Assembly: GCF_001194135.2 (NCBI RefSeq)
Contig: NC_068992.1
Span: 14,354,615 to 14,405,138, forward strand
Reading direction: 5' to 3'
DNA: 50,524 nucleotides
Source of the DNA: Octopus bimaculoides
Lineage: Eukaryota
The translations under genes were made by a program, and so were the position numbers. This document shows positions 12,119 to 45,185 of the stretch, piece after piece. The notes beneath the pieces were generated by a model, which was not told where the DNA came from, did no database searches, and was given only the letters and a program-made list of their open reading frames with translations. Every line of letters begins with the position of its first letter. Within the stretch, counting starts at the first letter, position 1.

Positions 12119-12172
12119 AGAACCGTAGCTTTGTAATGGTGCATTCTCCTGCAGATCTAGATGTCTCCGTTG
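12119..12172 (+). pseudogene. tRNA-Cys(GCA) pseudogene, 3'-truncated
   Basis: gtagct...gcattctcctgcagatctagatgtctccgtt aligns to TAGCT...GCATTCGACTGCAGATCGAGAGGTCCCCGGTT; GCA retained; followed by the array downstream block. Confidence 0.65.
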
Positions 12173-14247
12173 TTATGTAGAGCCAAGATGGCGAATCAGA
12201 TAATATATTACACTATCTCTTCATAGATCTTTCAAATATGATGCTGTTGTTTCTGGGCAAAACACGTCATATCTATAATTGTTTTAATTCATCAACCTGT
12301 TGGCACCAAGTAGAAAATTATGTAGGAAAATATCAATATCTATTGATACATAACTCTAATTACAAAGCTCAAGGTACTGACTCTCCTTATTTAAAATTCG
12401 TGCAAGAAACGAAAATAATTGTCCTTTTATACCTGTTAAAATATTGTATTGTTATACGATCAGTCTTTTGACACAGTTGATATATCTCATTTTTAAATGA
12501 TTTTTTTTTTTATATTCTCGCCGAAAATTGAAAATAGGTTAACCTAGATGATTTACAACCGTTTAAATGGGAGCTTAACAGCGACTTAATGTATTTAGTG
12601 CCAAACGATTGACAAAAGTAAATGTACGTAACATTTTTCATTTCCAAAGAAGTTTTACAGAAAATATCAAATTCTGTCAAAGAATATAAGCAGGAATATA
12701 AGTATTTTTCAGTAGTATGAAACCATATCATCATATTCATCATCTTTATTATTCATGATTTGAAAATTACATTGCTTCTTTTCTTAAACAATAATTAGAT
12801 ACGTCCTTGGAGAACATGCATAGAAACATTTAAGGTCAACCACGATGTTCATGGTAAAAAAAAAAATGTTCCAGAGACAAAAGTATTCAAGTTTAACACG
12901 AATTTCAGATGAAAAACACGGACGAAGTATTCAGATGTTAACAATAAAGTTCAAGATTGACGAAAAGGTTTAAAGTTAAATATGTTTAAGGTAAAACAAA
13001 TATGTTCGAGCTTAACAAATAATGGCTGAGGGAATGCCCCAAAAAGGTTGAAGATCCTGTAATGGCAATTTTCCGAGACGTGATTAAATTAGATTTATAA
13101 GGTTGTCAAAGTTTATCATATATCGCTCCAGATGTGCCAATAACAAATAGGCGAATAAGATGCATTCCTTATAATTTCCAATAATATTTCTACTTCAACA
13201 GCTAAGTTTGTATCGTTACTAAGATTCTAGATTCTCAGCTCGTTTCACTACATTCTAATCATTTAGTATTCCTAAATCTATCATTAATCCTCTACTGTCA
13301 TTTTTGTCATGAGCAATGATATAAGGTTAACTATGTACCATCTGGTAGTTTAGCTACCATCTGGTAGCTAAACTGTCATATATTTCTATTGTCATTTTCT
13401 ATGGCAAGTAGGTCGTAGGCATATTTTCTCAGAATTTCTCATACTTAAGACGTTAGTAAGTACTTCTAAATTCTTTGTTGTACAATGCTTGAGTTAGTTT
13501 ATTGAACGTTGATAAAAGAGAGACATGTCAAAATGTTTAATCTCTTCGTTATAAATACTGGACCTAAGTTGAGAGGATTCAGTGCAAGAGAAATCTCTTA
13601 TAATAAATTCAAAAAACAATGTCAATTTCCTGGCAGTATTCACGTGCTCTTTATCCACATCATTAACTACAAATTGTAGGACGAATTTAACAATTTACAC
13701 GGCGTTGTTATATAGGAAAATATAAGCAGGAATGTTAGACATACGACCAAATTGCAGAAATAGATGGAAGCTATGTACGTGCTGTAATTTGTAAGAGCAT
13801 AAACCGGGTATCCATAAACTAAAATTGGAATACAATTTCTGTTGAGTTCAGTATATGGTGTCAGACTCGAAAATAAACTAAAAGTAGAAAAAAGGGCAAG
13901 TTTAAAGAGTTAAATTACCCTACCCCGAGGTGTGTAGATTGTTAATGTTTCGTTCTGCGCCATTCGCTTGAAAGTGAGGATAATATGAAGTAATAGTCTC
14001 GTCGCTTCGTGGATTCTCTTATACCGTCACTCTCAGAAGAAGGGAATGTTATTTTCTACATTCCTCAAGGTAATCGAATCCATCGTAGTTTTCTATGAAT
14101 TGTCCCATTGACTATTTGTTTACAAATTAGTGTCAATAAAAATGCAACTGAAACATTTATTTACCACAAACATATTTCCTCTGTATTATTCTCTGCCATA
14201 GAATTATGTTTGTACAAAATATTAAATATGGGTACTGATAATGTGTC

Positions 14248-14319
14248 AGGATTAAAGCTCGGTGGTAGAGAACTCTATTGCAAACCAAGATAATTCCGGT
14301 TCAATCTCGGGTGCCCTCT
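14248..14319 (+). pseudogene. tRNA-Cys(GCA) pseudogene
   Basis: 72 nt: AGGATTAAAGCTCGGTGGTAGAGAACTCTATTGCAAACCAAGATAATTCCGGTTCAATCTCGGGTGCCCTCT. A and B boxes and GCA recognisable; stems broken. Confidence 0.85.
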
Positions 14320-15744
14320 AATGCAGCAGCCTTGAGTAGTTTTATCCACTTCACTGTGTTTTTATGCCATTGTGGTTATGTAGGGTCAATAAGGTAGAAT
14401 AGATAACATATTACAGTCTGTTTTCAATGGATCATCTTTCAAATCTGCTACTGTTGTCTCTTCGTTTCTGAACGAAACACGGTGATATATTTTAATTCAT
14501 CAACTTGTCGGCACTAAGTTGCAAATTACATGGAGAAAAGAACAACAGAGGTAATCATTTATAGATGCATATATCTGATAGTAAACAAGCCGGATATTGG
14601 CTCTGTTTAATGCAACTTTGTGTGAGAACCAGAAATAATTATCCTTTTTTTTTATTTGTTATTGTGAAAATATTATGTTGCTATACAATTAACCTTTAGA
14701 AACAGTTGTCATCTCTAGTTTTTAAATGATTTCTTTATATCTCACTTAAAATTTTTTTTTTTTAATTGTGCAAGTCTAAGAAGAGTAACCGGTGTTAAAA
14801 GAAAGCTTATGACCACTTTGGCAGATTTTACGGCTAACAGGGTTACAGAAGCAAATACAAATGACCTTTTACTTTTCCAAAACATCTATGAAAACATTTA
14901 TTAATAATCTTATGATAATATGACATTTTAATATATTTTTTATTACTTTGCTATTTCATATTACCATTTATATAATTAGATTTAGAACTGATAGTTTTCT
15001 CAACGGACTTCCGTAGTAAAATTTTAGTAAACGTTTTATATTTCTTGTTCTGAAATGTATGGATTAGTTTAATCAAAAGAAATTAAATAATGAATTATTA
15101 AATCGTTTAACCCCTTCGTTATAATCTGTTGAGGCTATATTGAAACAACTTCATTGTCATTGAACTCTGACACAACAGATCAATAATCTAAAACCACTTC
15201 TTTAGGACAACAGTATTGTCTTTCTCCACAAAATTGACTGAAAATGGTATTAGGAATCTGATATGATGTAATCTGGTGTTGTTAGATGGAAATAGAAACG
15301 AAGATTATATAGACCTACAATACTCCTAAAGATAAACATCCACCTTGCTATTCCTTGTGATTTGTAAGATTAGATTTTGGAGTCTATTAAATGAAATCAC
15401 ACCTGAATTTCTGAAGTGTTTGATACGTAGACTTTAGAAGACATAGGAGAGTTCAATTAGTTAAACTGTCTTGAGCGGTGTAGATTTTTAACGTTTTAGT
15501 CCCCATCTTTAGTTTTGAAATAGGAAAGGTTGTTTTGTCGCTTGAGCTTTTCACCTCAATATTCACTCTCAAACAAGTTTAAAAGTGCTCATTGTGAGAT
15601 TGTAGCTCCCACACAGTAAACGAACTCGCTAGTTTCCTTTAAACTGTCCACTGACTATTTGTTGACGACACAGTAATTAGCAGTTACTTTGTAGATCAGA
15701 TGCAACCATGATTAAATTATTAAAAATGAGCGTCGTTCATATGT

Positions 15745-15815
15745 AGAGATATATCTTAGTGGTAGAGCATTTGATATCCAACAAGAGGTTTCCTGTTTCA
15801 GCACTAGTATCCCTT
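15745..15815 (+). pseudogene. tRNA-Cys pseudogene (anticodon arm destroyed)
   Basis: AGAGATATATCTTAGTGGTAGAGCATTTGA...CAAGAGGTTTCCTGTTTCA...GTATCCCTT aligns with the intact copies. Confidence 0.8.
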
Positions 15816-43559: not shown

Positions 43560-43800
43560 AAGTCAGTACCCAAGTAGGCCAGTACTCAAGTAGGTCATGG
43601 TAGAATTTGAACTCAAAACGCAAAGAACTGGAACGTATATCGCAAGAAATATTCGGTTCACCGTTCTTGCAGTTCAGCCAATCCACTACTTTAGATTGTT
43701 TCTTTGTTCTTTTTATCGACCCCCGAGAGGATGAAGGGCAAAGTTGACCTCGACAGAATTTGAACTCAGAGCGCAGAGATATGAAACAAATAACCCGAAG
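43560..43800 (-). mobile_element. SINE family B fragments
   Basis: tttatcgacccccgagaggatgaagggcaaagttgacctcgacagaatttgaactcag. Confidence 0.8.
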
Positions 43801-44199
43801 TATTGTCTCCAAAGCTCTAGCGACTCAAACCAATTCACTAACTATATTGGGAGTTGGGGTATGGGTTTTCTCTCTTGAGTTTTTCTCTCTTTCTGAAAAA
43901 TTAATAAACGATGTATTCCACAGAAATTCTCTCTTACAAAATACTCAGCCATTGTGAAGACATTCAGTTTCTCAATTCTCAGTATCACAAAGACAACAAA
44001 ACTTATCTAATTGCCCTTTTCGTTTCATGCGCTTATTGAAAAAGAACATTGAAACAGATCGATACAAAAGCGTTGTAGATAATCTGCACAGTGCAGATTG
44101 GCAGGCGCTCTTTAGAGTCAGGACGTCTCTACTGAACAGGCAGTCGGAACAGTATGAAACCAGTAAGACCCAAAGAAGACTTCGATTAGCTTAGGCGAT

Positions 44200-44822
44200 C
44201 TTTCGATTTGATGCCACAAATGTCAGCCTGTTCAACTTCAACCGACAATAGGTTCGCACTAATATGCAGCAAAATTCCATGCAGTAGCTAGTTTTTGCCA
44301 GTGATGCTGTATTTGTTGCCCAATCGAAGTCAGCCCTGCTACTCATTGACTAACGATCTCTTTGGAGTGGAAGTCAACGTGAAGAAGTCTGAAGTGTTGC
44401 CCCTGCTCAAACTTAAGGAAGACAATCACTCTCCTTGCACCACCATCTGTGAGACTGGACCAAGATCGTTCCGTCAGTTCAGCGAACCCGAGGTGCATAA
44501 TTTCATCAGACGCTAAGAACGACAAAGAATTTGACAACAGACTAGCAAACCAAGCAGTATATTCGGTAATCTGTACGAAAGAATCTAGAACACCAAGCAT
44601 CTGAATTTAGACGCAAATATCAGTTTGTACAGACCTGTTGTGCTGACCATCACCACTATCCTGAACTCAGCTGAGTGGTGGGTTGCACACCGTCACCGCC
44701 TACGACCCATTGAATGCTTCCAACAGCGTCGCCTTTACTCTATCCTCAGCAAGCAATGGTGTCGCAGCTGGAACTTGCCAACATTGAGGCTGCGTTCCAC
44801 AAATCGCAGCTGCAACGAGGAG
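44200..44822 (+). mobile_element. RTE (BovB-like) LINE RT/C-terminal fragment, decayed
   Basis: FRFD..LFN, FA.DA..VA.S, FG.EVNVKKSEV, DKEFDNRLA...FGNLYERI, YRPVV.TT, HRHRLRPIECFQQRRLYSIL motifs with frameshifts. Confidence 0.9.
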
Positions 44823-45113
44823 NNNNNNNNNNNNNNNNNNNNNNNNNNNNNNNNNNNNNNNNNNNNNNNNNNNNNNNNNNNNNNNNNNNNNNNNNNNNNN
44901 NNNNNNNNNNNNNNNNNNNNNNGAACCCGGAACCATGTGGTTGGTAAACAAGCTACTTACAACACAGCCACTCCTGCGCCTGCGTGTATGTATGTACGTA
45001 TGCATAGACACACACATATATATAAACACGATGGCTTCAACACAGTATTCTACAATGCGAAAACGAAGAGTGAGAAAAAGTATTAATATATTTTTTTTAA
45101 AGAAAAATTTAGT

Positions 45114-45185
45114 AGAGGGCCACTCGGGTTCGAATCGGGAGACTCCGATCTGCATTCGAATGCTCTACCACGGAGATATATTTCC
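45114..45185 (-). pseudogene. tRNA-Cys(GCA) pseudogene, mildly decayed
   Basis: GGAAATATATCTCCGTGGTAGAGCATTCGAATGCAGATCGGAGTCTCCCGATTCGAACCCGAGTGGCCCTCT; A-box and B-box changes, broken acceptor stem; T5 terminator (45103-45107) and upstream TTTAAAT (45213-45219) retained. Confidence 0.9.

What the first reader, a model, noticed from the sequence alone, without database searches (positions are those of the whole stretch)
12119..45185. A single-isoacceptor tRNA-Cys gene field with at least 9 copies spanning every stage from intact to barely recognisable
Seen: three canonical or near-canonical tRNA-Cys(GCA) genes (35602, 39618, 41437), one lightly decayed copy (45114), and at least five heavily decayed copies (12119, 14248, 15745, 17501, 24282; possibly 21915). 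No other tRNA species was recognised in 50 kb. Inference: the locus records repeated local amplification and death of one tRNA-Cys gene, which a tRNA scanner would under-report. A past Cys-tRNA dosage expansion is conceivable but untested.
Basis: partly seen in the sequence, partly recalled or inferred. Interest (0 to 1): 0.75.

Follow-up and report, generated by a model that had tools for sequence, protein, structure and literature searches.

The report
Old tRNA-Cys gene array, mostly dead
This stretch holds an ancient local array of at least twelve duplicated units that each once carried a cysteine tRNA gene; three genes are still intact and the rest are decayed, which is a well-known way for tRNA gene families to evolve.

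Summary
ARAGORN and Rfam call only three tRNA-Cys(GCA) genes: 35602-35673 (+), 39618-39689 (-) and 41437-41508 (-). All seven score far better against Cys than against 18 other tRNAs, and none resembles the tRNA-derived SINE heads in the same window.

The decayed copies are not bare tRNAs. They head 1.5-2.1 kb units arranged head to tail from 12.1 to 24.9 kb. There are eight units, one of them inverted, and two have lost the tRNA. Their spacers are about 60% identical (shuffled control 41%).

The intact genes are 97-100% identical to each other, but their flanks are only 68-78% identical. Homology also runs upstream of the transcription start. This indicates DNA-level tandem duplication followed by birth-and-death evolution, not retroposition.

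A 16-nt box (TATATTTTGTTYAAAT, -44 to -29) is nearly invariant upstream of the four best copies and is probably a TATA-like Pol III element.

This is an ordinary kind of locus, well preserved.

The parts
41437..41508 (-). Intact tRNA-Cys(GCA) gene, used as the reference sequence. 21 of 21 cloverleaf pairs, A box TAGCTCAGTGG, B box GGTTCGAACCC, T at the discriminator position.
   Evidence: ARAGORN; RF00005 70.2 bits; pair count
39618..39689 (-). Intact tRNA-Cys(GCA) gene, an isodecoder. It differs from 41508 at gene positions 5 (A>G, which keeps a G-T pair) and 56 (G>A in the T loop).
   Evidence: ARAGORN; RF00005 67.6 bits; 21 of 21 pairs
35602..35673 (+). Near-canonical tRNA-Cys(GCA) gene. 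G51>T gives a T-C mismatch in the T stem and alters the first base of the B box. It also has G56>A.
   Evidence: ARAGORN; RF00005 60.6 bits with the mismatch flagged; 20 of 21 pairs
45115..45185 (-). tRNA-Cys pseudogene, lightly decayed. 61 of 72 positions match, 14 of 21 pairs are kept, the anticodon GCA is kept, the A box is TATCTCCGTGG, and there is a 1-nt deletion in the anticodon stem.
   Evidence: nhmmer E 9e-14; not found by RF00005 in a 211-bp search
14248..14319 (+). tRNA-Cys pseudogene at the head of unit 2. 51 of 72 positions match, anticodon GCA kept, 15 of 21 pairs kept.
   Evidence: nhmmer E 2e-9
17501..17572 (+). tRNA-Cys pseudogene at the head of unit 4. 51 of 72 positions match, the anticodon has mutated to GTA, the B box is still GGTTCAAACCC, and 13 of 21 pairs are kept.
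   Evidence: nhmmer E 7e-9
15745..15815 (+). tRNA-Cys pseudogene at the head of unit 3. 51 of 72 positions match and the anticodon loop is disrupted.
   Evidence: nhmmer E 2e-6
12119..12190 (+). tRNA-Cys remnant at the head of unit 1. The 5' two-thirds are present with GCA kept. The 3' third is deleted, so the remnant joins the downstream spacer directly.
   Evidence: nhmmer E 6e-4; alignments
21875..21939 (+). 5'-truncated tRNA-Cys remnant of unit 7 (model positions 21-70). It is followed by the conserved downstream motif and abuts the inverted unit 6.
   Evidence: nhmmer E 0.0095; context
24282..24343 (+). tRNA-Cys remnant at the head of unit 8. The 5' 31 nt are well kept, the middle is deleted, and the 3' acceptor end is recognisable.
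   Evidence: nhmmer E 0.013; the unit HMM hit 24246-24830 spans it
12058..14189 (+). Array unit 1: upstream box remnant, tRNA remnant and spacer.
   Evidence: Unit HMM hits 12160-12727 and 13446-14114; blast
14190..15687 (+). Array unit 2, 1.5 kb.
   Evidence: The alignment 13381-15207 ~ 14952-16657 runs across the unit junctions.
15688..17440 (+). Array unit 3, with a family-B repeat inserted at 17019-17096.
17441..18400 (+). Array unit 4. It has an internal duplication of about 115 bp of the proximal spacer. The distal part is replaced by repeat insertions.
   Evidence: Unit HMM hits 17509-17684 and 17720-18237
19325..20798 (+). Array unit 5. Only the spacer is left, no tRNA remnant is detectable, and a SINE is inserted at 19793-20241.
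   Evidence: Unit HMM hits 19325-19779 and 20592-20798; tRNA search gave a null score
20973..21886 (-). Array unit 6, inverted. Only the spacer is left and no tRNA remnant is detectable.
   Evidence: Unit HMM hits on the - strand, E 1e-53 and 3e-14
21875..22956 (+). Array unit 7: truncated tRNA remnant, SINE insertion at 22137-22491, then spacer.
24246..24830 (+). Array unit 8, the first part only. It lies on a separate contig after the gap at 23247-24001.
   Evidence: Unit HMM E 2e-56
35558..35573 (+). Conserved upstream box TATATTTTGTTTAAAT at -44 to -29 of the 35602 gene. Proposed TATA-like Pol III upstream element.
   Evidence: Exact motif match; conservation peak
39718..39733 (-). The same upstream box (TATATTTTGTTCAAAT), ending 28 nt before the 39689 gene.
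41537..41550 (-). The same upstream box (ATTTTTGTTTAAAT), ending 28 nt before the 41508 gene.
45213..45228 (-). The same upstream box, exact, ending 27 nt before the first base (45185) of the 45115-45185 pseudogene.
35683..35687 (+). T5 run at +10 to +14 after the gene. Presumed Pol III terminator.
39606..39610 (-). T5 run at +8 to +12 after the gene. Presumed Pol III terminator.
41424..41432 (-). T9 run at +5 to +13 after the gene. Presumed Pol III terminator.

Best explanation
The locus is the remains of an old local array made by DNA-level tandem duplication, most likely unequal crossing-over. One local inversion is seen within each block. The duplicated unit was a 1.5-2 kb segment carrying one nuclear tRNA-Cys(GCA) gene, its upstream box and a non-coding spacer.

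The family then evolved by birth and death. Three copies (35602, 39618, 41437) have been kept almost unchanged while their flanks drifted. They carry everything a Pol III type-2 gene needs: A and B boxes, a conserved TATA-like box at -44 to -29, and an oligo-T terminator within 14 nt. They are most likely working genes.

At least seven other copies lost function. They decayed neutrally towards the AT-rich background, to between 85% and 56% identity with the intact gene. Two further units lost the tRNA altogether. SINEs and other repeats later inserted between and within units.

Shown here: the copies, their Cys origin, the tandem unit structure, the contrast between conserved genes and diverged flanks, and the conserved upstream box.

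Inferred: unequal crossing-over as the mechanism, purifying selection rather than gene conversion as the reason the three genes stay intact, their transcription, and the promoter role of the box.
For: Intact genes:
- Three genes reach RF00005 scores of 60.6-70.2 bits and are called Cys(GCA) by ARAGORN.
- They keep 20-21 of 21 cloverleaf pairs, have canonical A and B boxes, and have T5-T9 runs at +5 to +14.

Decayed copies:
- Seven are recovered by the Cys profile at E from 9e-14 to 0.013.
- Each scores best against Cys, 17-46 versus 9-24 for the next tRNA.
- Non-Cys decoy tRNAs give E>=0.12 on 14248 and 17501, the only two of the six heavily decayed copies they hit at all at E<=1, and E 0.008 on 45185.

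Array structure:
- A unit HMM maps eight units between 12.1 and 24.9 kb, seven on the + strand and one inverted.
- One alignment, 13381-15207 ~ 14952-16657, is longer than a unit and has E 8e-96.
- Spacer identity averages 0.60, against 0.41 for shuffled sequences. K2P distances are 0.42-0.79.

Selection on the intact genes:
- The genes are 70-72 of 72 identical to each other, while their flanks are 68-78% identical.
- Flank homology reaches about 200 bp upstream of +1.

Upstream box:
- 14 of 16 columns are invariant, against 21% of upstream columns overall. None of 200,000 permutations reached this.
- The exact 14-mer occurs three times in 50 kb, each time 27-28 nt before a Cys copy.

Neutral decay:
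- Substitutions in dead copies run 91 GC>AT to 16 AT>GC. Their GC content falls from 0.60 to 0.38-0.46.

Literature:
- tRNA clusters arise by tandem duplication, and copies readily become pseudogenes (PMC4981973).
- Unequal crossing-over is the model for the Arabidopsis tRNA array (PMC2886086).
Against: - Clustered tRNA genes with canonical elements can be silent, as in Arabidopsis (PMC7544208).
- No genome-wide search was possible. I cannot exclude that the same unit occurs at many loci.
- The decayed block and the intact block share only the tRNA plus about 50 bp on each side. They are joined across five assembly gaps.
- The near-identity of the three genes could come from gene conversion rather than selection on each copy.
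- The upstream box is perfect even in the dead 45115 copy. Part of its conservation could therefore be shared ancestry.
- 35602 has a T-stem mismatch and may itself be failing.
Confidence: 0.8

Rival explanations
1. The copies are a tRNA-Cys-derived SINE or other Pol III retrocopies that happened to land near each other.
For: The window is rich in tRNA-derived SINEs. Decayed tRNA-like heads are the usual signature of SINEs.
Against: - All copies share sequence upstream of the tRNA start, including a box at -44 to -29. A Pol III transcript cannot carry upstream sequence.
- Homology between copies runs for 0.6-1.9 kb and continues across unit junctions.
- Seven of the eight units in the decayed array are in the same orientation and lie head to tail.
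- No poly-A or simple-repeat tail or target-site duplication follows the copies.
- The SINE heads in the window are Ala-like or Met/Lys-like and do not match the Cys profile.
Confidence: 0.03
2. The 1.5-2 kb unit is itself a mobile or satellite-like DNA element carrying a captured tRNA-Cys gene. Examples would be rolling-circle (Helitron-type) capture or a macro-satellite tDNA repeat. In that case it would be present in many arrays across the genome and would not be a one-off local duplication.
For: - The Arabidopsis Cys tDNA cluster sits on Helitron elements (PMC7544208).
- Tandem tDNA repeats of kilobase unit length are known in other animals (my own knowledge: the Xenopus 3.18-kb tDNA repeat).
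- Nothing in the window excludes other arrays elsewhere.
Against: - The consensus unit has no ORF with a Pfam match.
- No terminal repeats or hairpins define an element. The only inverted copy of the conserved spacer motif is one recent 48-nt duplication.
- All copies in the 50 kb are confined to two blocks.
- Divergence of about 40% between neighbouring units shows no recent activity.
Confidence: 0.1
3. The array arose as described, but all copies are now transcriptionally silent, including the three intact ones. Their intactness is kept by gene conversion from active tRNA-Cys genes elsewhere, not by their own function.
For: - Clustered Cys, Ser, Tyr and Pro tDNAs in Arabidopsis keep canonical cis-elements but are epigenetically silenced (PMC7544208).
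- The sharp drop of identity exactly at the gene borders fits short conversion tracts as well as it fits selection.
Against: - The three genes are three different isodecoders, which argues against recent homogenisation.
- The upstream box and the terminators are also kept. Conversion limited to the gene would not explain this.
- Seven neighbouring copies were not rescued by conversion.
Confidence: 0.15
4. The multiplicity is an assembly artefact, with haplotigs or collapsed and expanded repeats placed side by side.
For: This is a draft scaffold with twelve gaps. Two pairs of 94-99% identical inverted segments flank gaps.
Against: - The Cys units are only 52-68% identical in their spacers, far beyond allelic divergence.
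- Units 1-7 lie on one gap-free contig and the three intact genes on another.
Confidence: 0.02

Closest known systems
Tandem tRNA gene arrays formed by unequal crossing-over, such as the Arabidopsis chromosome 1 Ser-Tyr-Tyr array of 27 units (PMC2886086)
   Same: Head-to-tail units of kilobase size, each carrying tRNA gene(s) plus a homologous spacer. Local duplication is the source of the copies.
   Different: The Arabidopsis units are young and evolve in concert, so the genes stay alike. Here the units are about 40% diverged, most genes are dead, and each unit held a single gene.
The Arabidopsis chromosome 5 tRNA-Cys cluster of four genes, which is epigenetically silenced (PMC7544208)
   Same: A single-isoacceptor Cys(GCA) cluster with regularly spaced copies in a repeat-rich setting.
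   Different: That cluster has four intact copies sitting on Helitron elements and is shown to be silent. Here there are three intact and at least seven dead copies, no recognisable carrier element, and unknown expression.
Birth-and-death turnover of animal tRNA gene clusters in primates and Drosophila (PMC4981973). The human chromosome 7 tRNA-Cys-GCA cluster is a further example, from my own memory of GtRNAdb and not checked here.
   Same: Clusters grow by tandem duplication. Individual copies are unstable and become pseudogenes. Cys(GCA) copies can mutate to GTA, as the 17501 remnant has.
   Different: Those studies rely on scanner-detectable genes and pseudogenes. This locus preserves a deeper series, down to remnants that no scanner reports, together with their spacers.
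tRNA-derived SINEs, including the family present in this window
   Same: Decayed tRNA-like sequence with A and B box remnants, present in many copies.
   Different: SINE copies share nothing upstream of the head, are 0.1-0.6 kb long, have a tail, and are dispersed in either orientation. The Cys units fail each of these features (see the membership test).
TATA or TATA-like upstream elements of Pol III type-2 genes (PMC7279448), and anticodon-specific upstream motifs of animal tRNA genes (PMC3082873)
   Same: An A/T-rich box about 30 nt upstream of the gene, conserved among genes of one anticodon family.
   Different: The box here lies at -44 to -29, slightly further upstream than the -30/-24 quoted for TATA boxes. 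It is known only from paralogues at one locus and is untested for TBP/TFIIIB binding.

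Membership tests
Nuclear tRNA-Cys(GCA) gene (Rfam RF00005; Pol III type-2 gene) | Cloverleaf that scores at or above the RF00005 gathering score (29 bits) | tested here: met
   Met by 35602, 39618 and 41437 (60.6-70.2 bits). Not met by any of the seven decayed copies, even at E<=10 in small searches. Those seven are pseudogenes or remnants, not members.
Nuclear tRNA-Cys(GCA) gene (Rfam RF00005; Pol III type-2 gene) | Anticodon GCA, and T (U73) at the discriminator position | tested here: met
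   ARAGORN reports anticodon gca in all three. The base after the acceptor stem is T in all three. GCA is still present in the dead copies 12119, 14248 and 45185.
Nuclear tRNA-Cys(GCA) gene (Rfam RF00005; Pol III type-2 gene) | Internal A box (TRGYnnARBGG) and B box (GGTTCRAnYCY), and an oligo-T terminator | tested here: met
   The A box is TAGCTCAGTGG in all three. The B box is GGTTCGAACCC in 41508, GGTTCAAACCC in 39689 and TGTTCAAACCC in 35602, the last with one departure. T5-T9 runs lie at +5 to +14. The consensus sequences are quoted from PMC7279448.
Nuclear tRNA-Cys(GCA) gene (Rfam RF00005; Pol III type-2 gene) | Transcribed, processed and charged | not testable with these tools
Tandem tRNA gene array (local duplication, birth and death) | Units head to tail in one orientation, with homologous spacers and homology continuous across unit junctions | tested here: met
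   Unit HMM map. The alignment 13381-15207 ~ 14952-16657 has an offset of 1571 bp and E 8e-96. Spacer identity is 0.60 against 0.41 for shuffled sequences. One unit is inverted.
Tandem tRNA gene array (local duplication, birth and death) | Copies share sequence upstream of the transcription start (DNA-level copying) | tested here: met
Tandem tRNA gene array (local duplication, birth and death) | A mixture of conserved genes and pseudogenes of the same isoacceptor | tested here: met
   Three intact copies, seven decayed copies and two units without a tRNA. The genes are 97-100% identical while their flanks are 68-78% identical.
Tandem tRNA gene array (local duplication, birth and death) | Confined to this locus, with an orthologous array in related species | not testable with these tools
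   No eukaryotic genome collection was available. A metagenome scan for the box plus the gene found nothing. ORF look-ups found nothing.
tRNA-derived SINE | No homology between copies upstream of the tRNA-like head | tested here: not met
   A shared upstream box and up to about 200 bp of upstream homology.
tRNA-derived SINE | Short composite element (about 0.1-0.6 kb) ending in an A-rich or simple-repeat tail, with target-site duplications | tested here: not met
   Homology runs 0.6-1.9 kb past the tRNA. No tail is seen after the copies. Target-site duplications were not formally searched for.
tRNA-derived SINE | Many dispersed copies genome-wide | not testable with these tools
   No access to the source genome.
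TATA-like upstream element of a Pol III type-2 promoter | A/T-rich box about 25-35 nt upstream, conserved more than its surroundings | tested here: met
   The box TATATTTTGTTYAAAT lies at -44 to -29. 14 of 16 columns are invariant in four copies, against 21% overall. None of 200,000 permutations reached this.
TATA-like upstream element of a Pol III type-2 promoter | Binds TBP/TFIIIB, or its mutation lowers transcription | not testable with these tools
   This needs an experiment.

The most novel reading that the evidence does not exclude
The array records a lineage-specific burst to a dozen or more tRNA-Cys genes, each with its own isoacceptor-specific TATA-like upstream promoter box. Such boxes are unusual for animal tRNA genes. 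The burst would reflect a period of selection for higher or separately regulated Cys-tRNA supply, for instance alongside expansion of cysteine-rich protein families. That selection was later relaxed, leaving three working genes.
Probability: 0.07. Interest if true: 0.55.

Novelty: new member of a known kind. Interest (0 to 1): 0.27.

Why it matters
The locus is a clean, self-contained example of how tRNA gene families turn over. One locus shows paralogues at every stage from intact to unrecognisable, with their spacers as an internal neutral yardstick.

It is useful in three modest ways.
- It is a warning that tRNA scanners report 3 of at least 10 tRNA-derived sequences here.
- It is material for measuring the mutation spectrum of dead tRNA genes against their flanks. 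Substitutions run 91 GC>AT to 16 AT>GC.
- It gives a concrete candidate for an upstream Pol III promoter box in a mollusc, which can be tested because the three intact genes are distinguishable isodecoders.

It does not change what is known about tRNA gene evolution.

Tried and rejected
Closed or empty tools:
No read depth, expression or gap-closure test was possible, and read laying could not be used.
- The look-up of encoding contigs on two window ORFs found nothing. I could not retrieve another assembly of the locus or identify the organism.
- A metagenome scan for the upstream box plus the gene start found nothing.

Extra candidate copies from the Cys profile:
- 47871-47905 (E 0.07, a 26-nt match). 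It has no unit homology and no box at the right distance, so I left it unconfirmed.
- 29304-29366 (-) (E 0.7). Its score is at the null level, so I rejected it.
- 31220-31282 and 3803-3878. These are other tRNA-like heads (Phe/Lys-like and Met/Lys/Ile-like), not Cys.

Other motif matches:
- Box matches with 1-2 mismatches at 30947, 27941, 11440, 19392, 27393 and 18052 have no tRNA remnant next to them.

Coding content:
- I looked for coding content in the consensus unit and in nearby ORFs. There were no Pfam hits.

Terminal inverted repeat idea:
- I considered that the conserved spacer motif TGTAGAGTCAATATGGYG might be a transposon terminal inverted repeat. I rejected this. The motif occurs once per unit in direct orientation. 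The only inverted copy is one recent 48-nt duplication.

Rfam noise:
- The many sub-threshold Rfam 'microRNA' hits (mir-297, mir-3149 and others) are TG/TA microsatellites.

Bacterial scan:
- The bacterial promoter and terminator scan gave counts at chance level and is irrelevant to a eukaryotic Pol III gene.

Full report
**1. Observation**

ARAGORN finds three tRNA genes in the 50.5-kb window. All three are Cys(GCA): 35602-35673 (+), 39618-39689 (-) and 41435/41437-41508 (-). Rfam RF00005 confirms them at 60.6, 67.6 and 70.2 bits against a gathering score of 29. No other tRNA gene is present.

At E<=10, the Rfam scan of the whole window adds no further tRNA hit. The same is true of a 3.4-kb piece holding three claimed remnants and of a 211-bp piece holding the 'lightly decayed' copy.

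I built a sequence profile from the three intact genes and searched with nhmmer with filters off.
- 45115-45185 (-), E 9e-14
- 14248-14319 (+), E 2e-9
- 17501-17572 (+), E 7e-9
- 15745-15815 (+), E 2e-6
- 12114-12183 (+), E 6e-4
- 21875-21939 (+), E 0.0095
- 24282-24332 (+), E 0.013

**2. Are the remnants specifically Cys?**

I ran local alignments against a panel of 19 non-Cys decoy tRNAs (18 human-like and one yeast Phe) plus the window's own Cys gene. Cys comes first for all seven remnants, scoring 17-46 against 9-24 for the runner-up. The 99th percentile of shuffled 250-bp pieces is 12 and the maximum of 2000 is 16.

With nhmmer, the 18 human-like decoys hit only two of the six heavily decayed remnants at E<=1 (14248 and 17501, E 0.12 or worse) and reach only E 0.008 on 45185.

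GCA is still at the anticodon position in 12119, 14248 and 45185. In 17501 it has become GTA.

The remnants keep 6-15 of the 21 cloverleaf pairs, while the intact genes keep 20-21. Their substitutions relative to the intact sequence run 91 GC>AT to 16 AT>GC. Their GC content falls from 0.60 to 0.38-0.46. This is what neutral decay in a genome of about 33% GC predicts.

**3. What the copies are part of**

A self-comparison shows that the remnants share long flanks. Examples:
- 12169-12743 ~ 14372-14976 ~ 15870-16419 ~ 24397-24885
- 13381-15207 ~ 14952-16657: one continuous alignment of 1874 bp at an offset of 1571 bp, with E 8e-96. This is longer than one repeat unit.

An HMM built from two units maps eight units between 12.1 and 24.9 kb.
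- Units 1-4 start at 12119, 14248, 15745 and 17501.
- Unit 5 (19325-20798) and the inverted unit 6 (20973-21886, - strand) have no detectable tRNA remnant.
- Unit 7 carries the 5'-truncated remnant at 21875. A SINE has inserted into its spacer.
- Unit 8 starts at 24246.

Spacer identity between units averages 0.60, with a range of 0.52-0.68. Shuffled controls aligned the same way average 0.41. K2P distances are 0.42-0.79. The consensus unit has no ORF with a Pfam match.

This part of the locus is therefore an old head-to-tail array of a non-coding unit of 1.5-2.1 kb, headed by a tRNA-Cys gene.

**4. The intact genes**

The three intact genes and the 45115 pseudogene also share flanks. The alignment 35403-35737 ~ 39904-39555 covers 355 bp at 67% identity. 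Other pairs share 160-240 bp at 64-77%.

Pairwise, the genes are 70-72 of 72 identical, while their flanks are 68-78% identical in the alignable parts. These are therefore old duplicates as well. The gene alone has been held constant, by purifying selection or by conversion.

The unit HMM from the decayed array matches the intact block only over the tRNA plus 12-45 bp upstream. Common origin of the two blocks therefore rests on the gene and its upstream box.

The three genes are different isodecoders. Relative to 41508:
- 39689 has A5G and G56A.
- 35602 has G51T and G56A. G51T creates a T-C mismatch in the T stem and changes the first base of the B box.

Each gene has a T5-T9 run at +5 to +14.

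**5. Upstream box**

I aligned 242 columns upstream of the four best copies. 21% of the columns are invariant. In the block from -44 to -29 (TATATTTTGTTYAAAT), 14 of 16 columns are invariant, while -28 to -1 is almost unconserved. No permutation of the columns out of 200,000 gave a 16-column window with 14 or more invariant columns.

The exact 14-mer TATTTTGTTYAAAT occurs three times in the window, each time ending 27-28 nt before a Cys copy. The 41508 gene has it with two mismatches. Recognisable remnants sit before 12119 and 24282. Other near-matches have no tRNA remnant beside them.

TATA boxes at about -30/-24 promote TFIIIB recruitment on plant and S. pombe tRNA genes and are rare in animals (PMC7279448). 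Animal tRNA genes that read the same codon tend to share upstream motifs (PMC3082873).

I infer that this box is a TATA-like upstream element of these Pol III genes. This is untested. Part of the conservation could be shared ancestry, since the dead 45115 copy also has a perfect box.

**6. SINE or local array?**

The window does contain tRNA-derived SINEs:
- A family of about 430 bp with at least 12 copies. It has an Ala-like head (for example 19801-19859, E 3e-4 against the Ala decoy), an internal TA/TG microsatellite and a conserved 3' end.
- A Met/Lys/Ile-like head at 3807-3873.

Neither matches the Cys profile, and no Cys copy aligns to them.

More decisively, the Cys copies share sequence upstream of the transcription start. 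Their homology runs for kilobases and continues across unit junctions. A Pol III retrocopy cannot produce either feature.

What could not be tested is whether the unit also occurs elsewhere in the genome.

**7. Gaps**

The window has twelve runs of N. None touches a Cys copy. Units 1-7 lie on the gap-free contig 11262-23246. The three intact genes, including the switch from + to - strand between 35602 and 39689, lie on the gap-free contig 34528-44822. Unit 8 (contig 24002-26082) and the 45115 pseudogene (contig 44923-46816) are placed by scaffolding only. So is the linkage of the two blocks.

The 23247-24001 gap has (TA)n on both sides, as expected for an unassembled microsatellite. I could not test continuity with reads. 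About 2.6 kb of estimated gap lies inside the finding's span, so more copies could exist.

**8. Mechanism and comparison**

The best-supported account has four steps:
1. Tandem duplication of a kilobase unit, most likely by unequal crossing-over. This is the model for the Arabidopsis Ser-Tyr-Tyr array (PMC2886086).
2. One inversion in each block.
3. Birth-and-death evolution of the kind described for animal tRNA clusters (PMC4981973).
4. Later insertion of SINEs and other repeats.

A single-isoacceptor Cys cluster is known in Arabidopsis. There it is epigenetically silent despite canonical promoter elements (PMC7544208). That is the main caution against assuming that the three intact genes here are active.

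From my own memory of GtRNAdb, not checked here, the human genome also has a tRNA-Cys-GCA cluster on chromosome 7.

The locus is a new member of a known kind. Its distinguishing feature is the depth of the preserved decay series.

**9. Verdict**

- The amplified thing was a unit, not the bare gene.
- There are at least 12 units.
- The intact genes are old, maintained copies.

The dosage-expansion idea remains speculation. Interest is low to moderate.

Noticed in passing
19793-20241 (+), 45722-46145 (-), 41879-42265 (+), 36256-36750, 37426-37951, 22137-22491, 28503-28856, 30404-30543, 18649-18884, 25387-25619, 50293-50524, 46304-46577, 2597-2683, 4785-4859: A tRNA-derived SINE family of about 430 bp. 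It has an Ala-like head, a conserved core, an internal TA/TG microsatellite and a conserved 3' end (...CCAGCATGGCCGCAGTCAAATGACTGAAACAAGTAAAAG). There are at least 12 copies at 63-88% identity, and several are inserted inside the Cys array. Some assembly gaps sit in its microsatellite or head, for example 44823-44922.
   Followed up: partly
34528-34838, 40004-40479, 18422-18570, 30174-30376, 2804-2928, 17019-17096, 43712-43822, 35820-35972: A second interspersed repeat family with units of about 110-180 bp, often in adjacent direct or inverted pairs, at 66-92% identity. I did not classify it.
   Followed up: no
3807-3873 (+) and downstream to about 3960: A tRNA-like head closest to Met/Lys/Ile decoys (E 2e-7 against the Met decoy; RF00005 17.4 bits, below threshold). 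It is followed by SINE-body-like sequence. This is a different tRNA-derived element, not Cys. The - strand gives a spurious 'Plastid-ycf2' Rfam hit.
   Followed up: partly
25816-25875 (+); 31221-31263 (+): Two more weak tRNA-like pieces. The first is Tyr/Arg-like (E 0.015) and the second Phe/Lys-like (E 0.09). The second has box-A-like and box-B-like motifs. They are probably heads of other SINEs.
   Followed up: no
10713-11977 versus 28507-27465; 33049-34342 versus 47704-46565: Two unrelated pairs of inverted segments of about 1.2 kb, at 94-99% identity. The first pair falls to 76% in its distal part. Each pair has an assembly gap at the same internal position. Each pair brackets one of the two tRNA-Cys blocks. 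They are far younger than the array. They could be a two-copy transposon, a recent inverted duplication or a scaffolding artefact; I could not decide without reads.
   Followed up: partly
17149-17196 and 17783-17830: A perfect 48-nt inverted repeat, 586 nt apart, flanking the 17501 remnant. It is 100% identical in a region where paralogous units are about 60% identical, so it is a recent small inverted duplication or conversion. One arm is an extra copy of the conserved spacer motif TGTAGATTCAATATGGTG.
   Followed up: partly
33400-33453: A telomere-like (CCCTAA/TAACCC)n run abutting the gap at 33454-34026. A CT-rich microsatellite lies on the other side of the gap.
   Followed up: no
12176-12193, 14379-14396, 15876-15893, 17635-17652, 24401-24418: A spacer block about 55-60 nt downstream of each old tRNA remnant (TGTAGAGTCAATATGGYG, continuing into ...TAGATAATATATTAC). 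It is better conserved than the tRNA remnants themselves: 7 matches with up to 3 mismatches against 0.15 expected. No function is known. It is absent downstream of the intact genes.
   Followed up: partly
8187-8630 (+): An ORF of 147 aa. By eye it resembles the C-terminal part of a mariner/Tc1-type transposase, but it has no Pfam match at E<=1, so this is unverified.
   Followed up: partly
12-95, 2125-2600, 6520-6830, 25226-25454, 26458-26665, 49120-49606 and others: Many sub-threshold Rfam 'microRNA' matches (mir-297, mir-3149, mir-466, mir-1277 and others). All lie on TG/TA microsatellites, so they are artefacts of low-complexity sequence.
   Followed up: yes
22934-22958 and 22962-22986: A perfect 25-nt palindrome with a 3-nt loop, at the end of the unit 7 spacer.
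   Followed up: no
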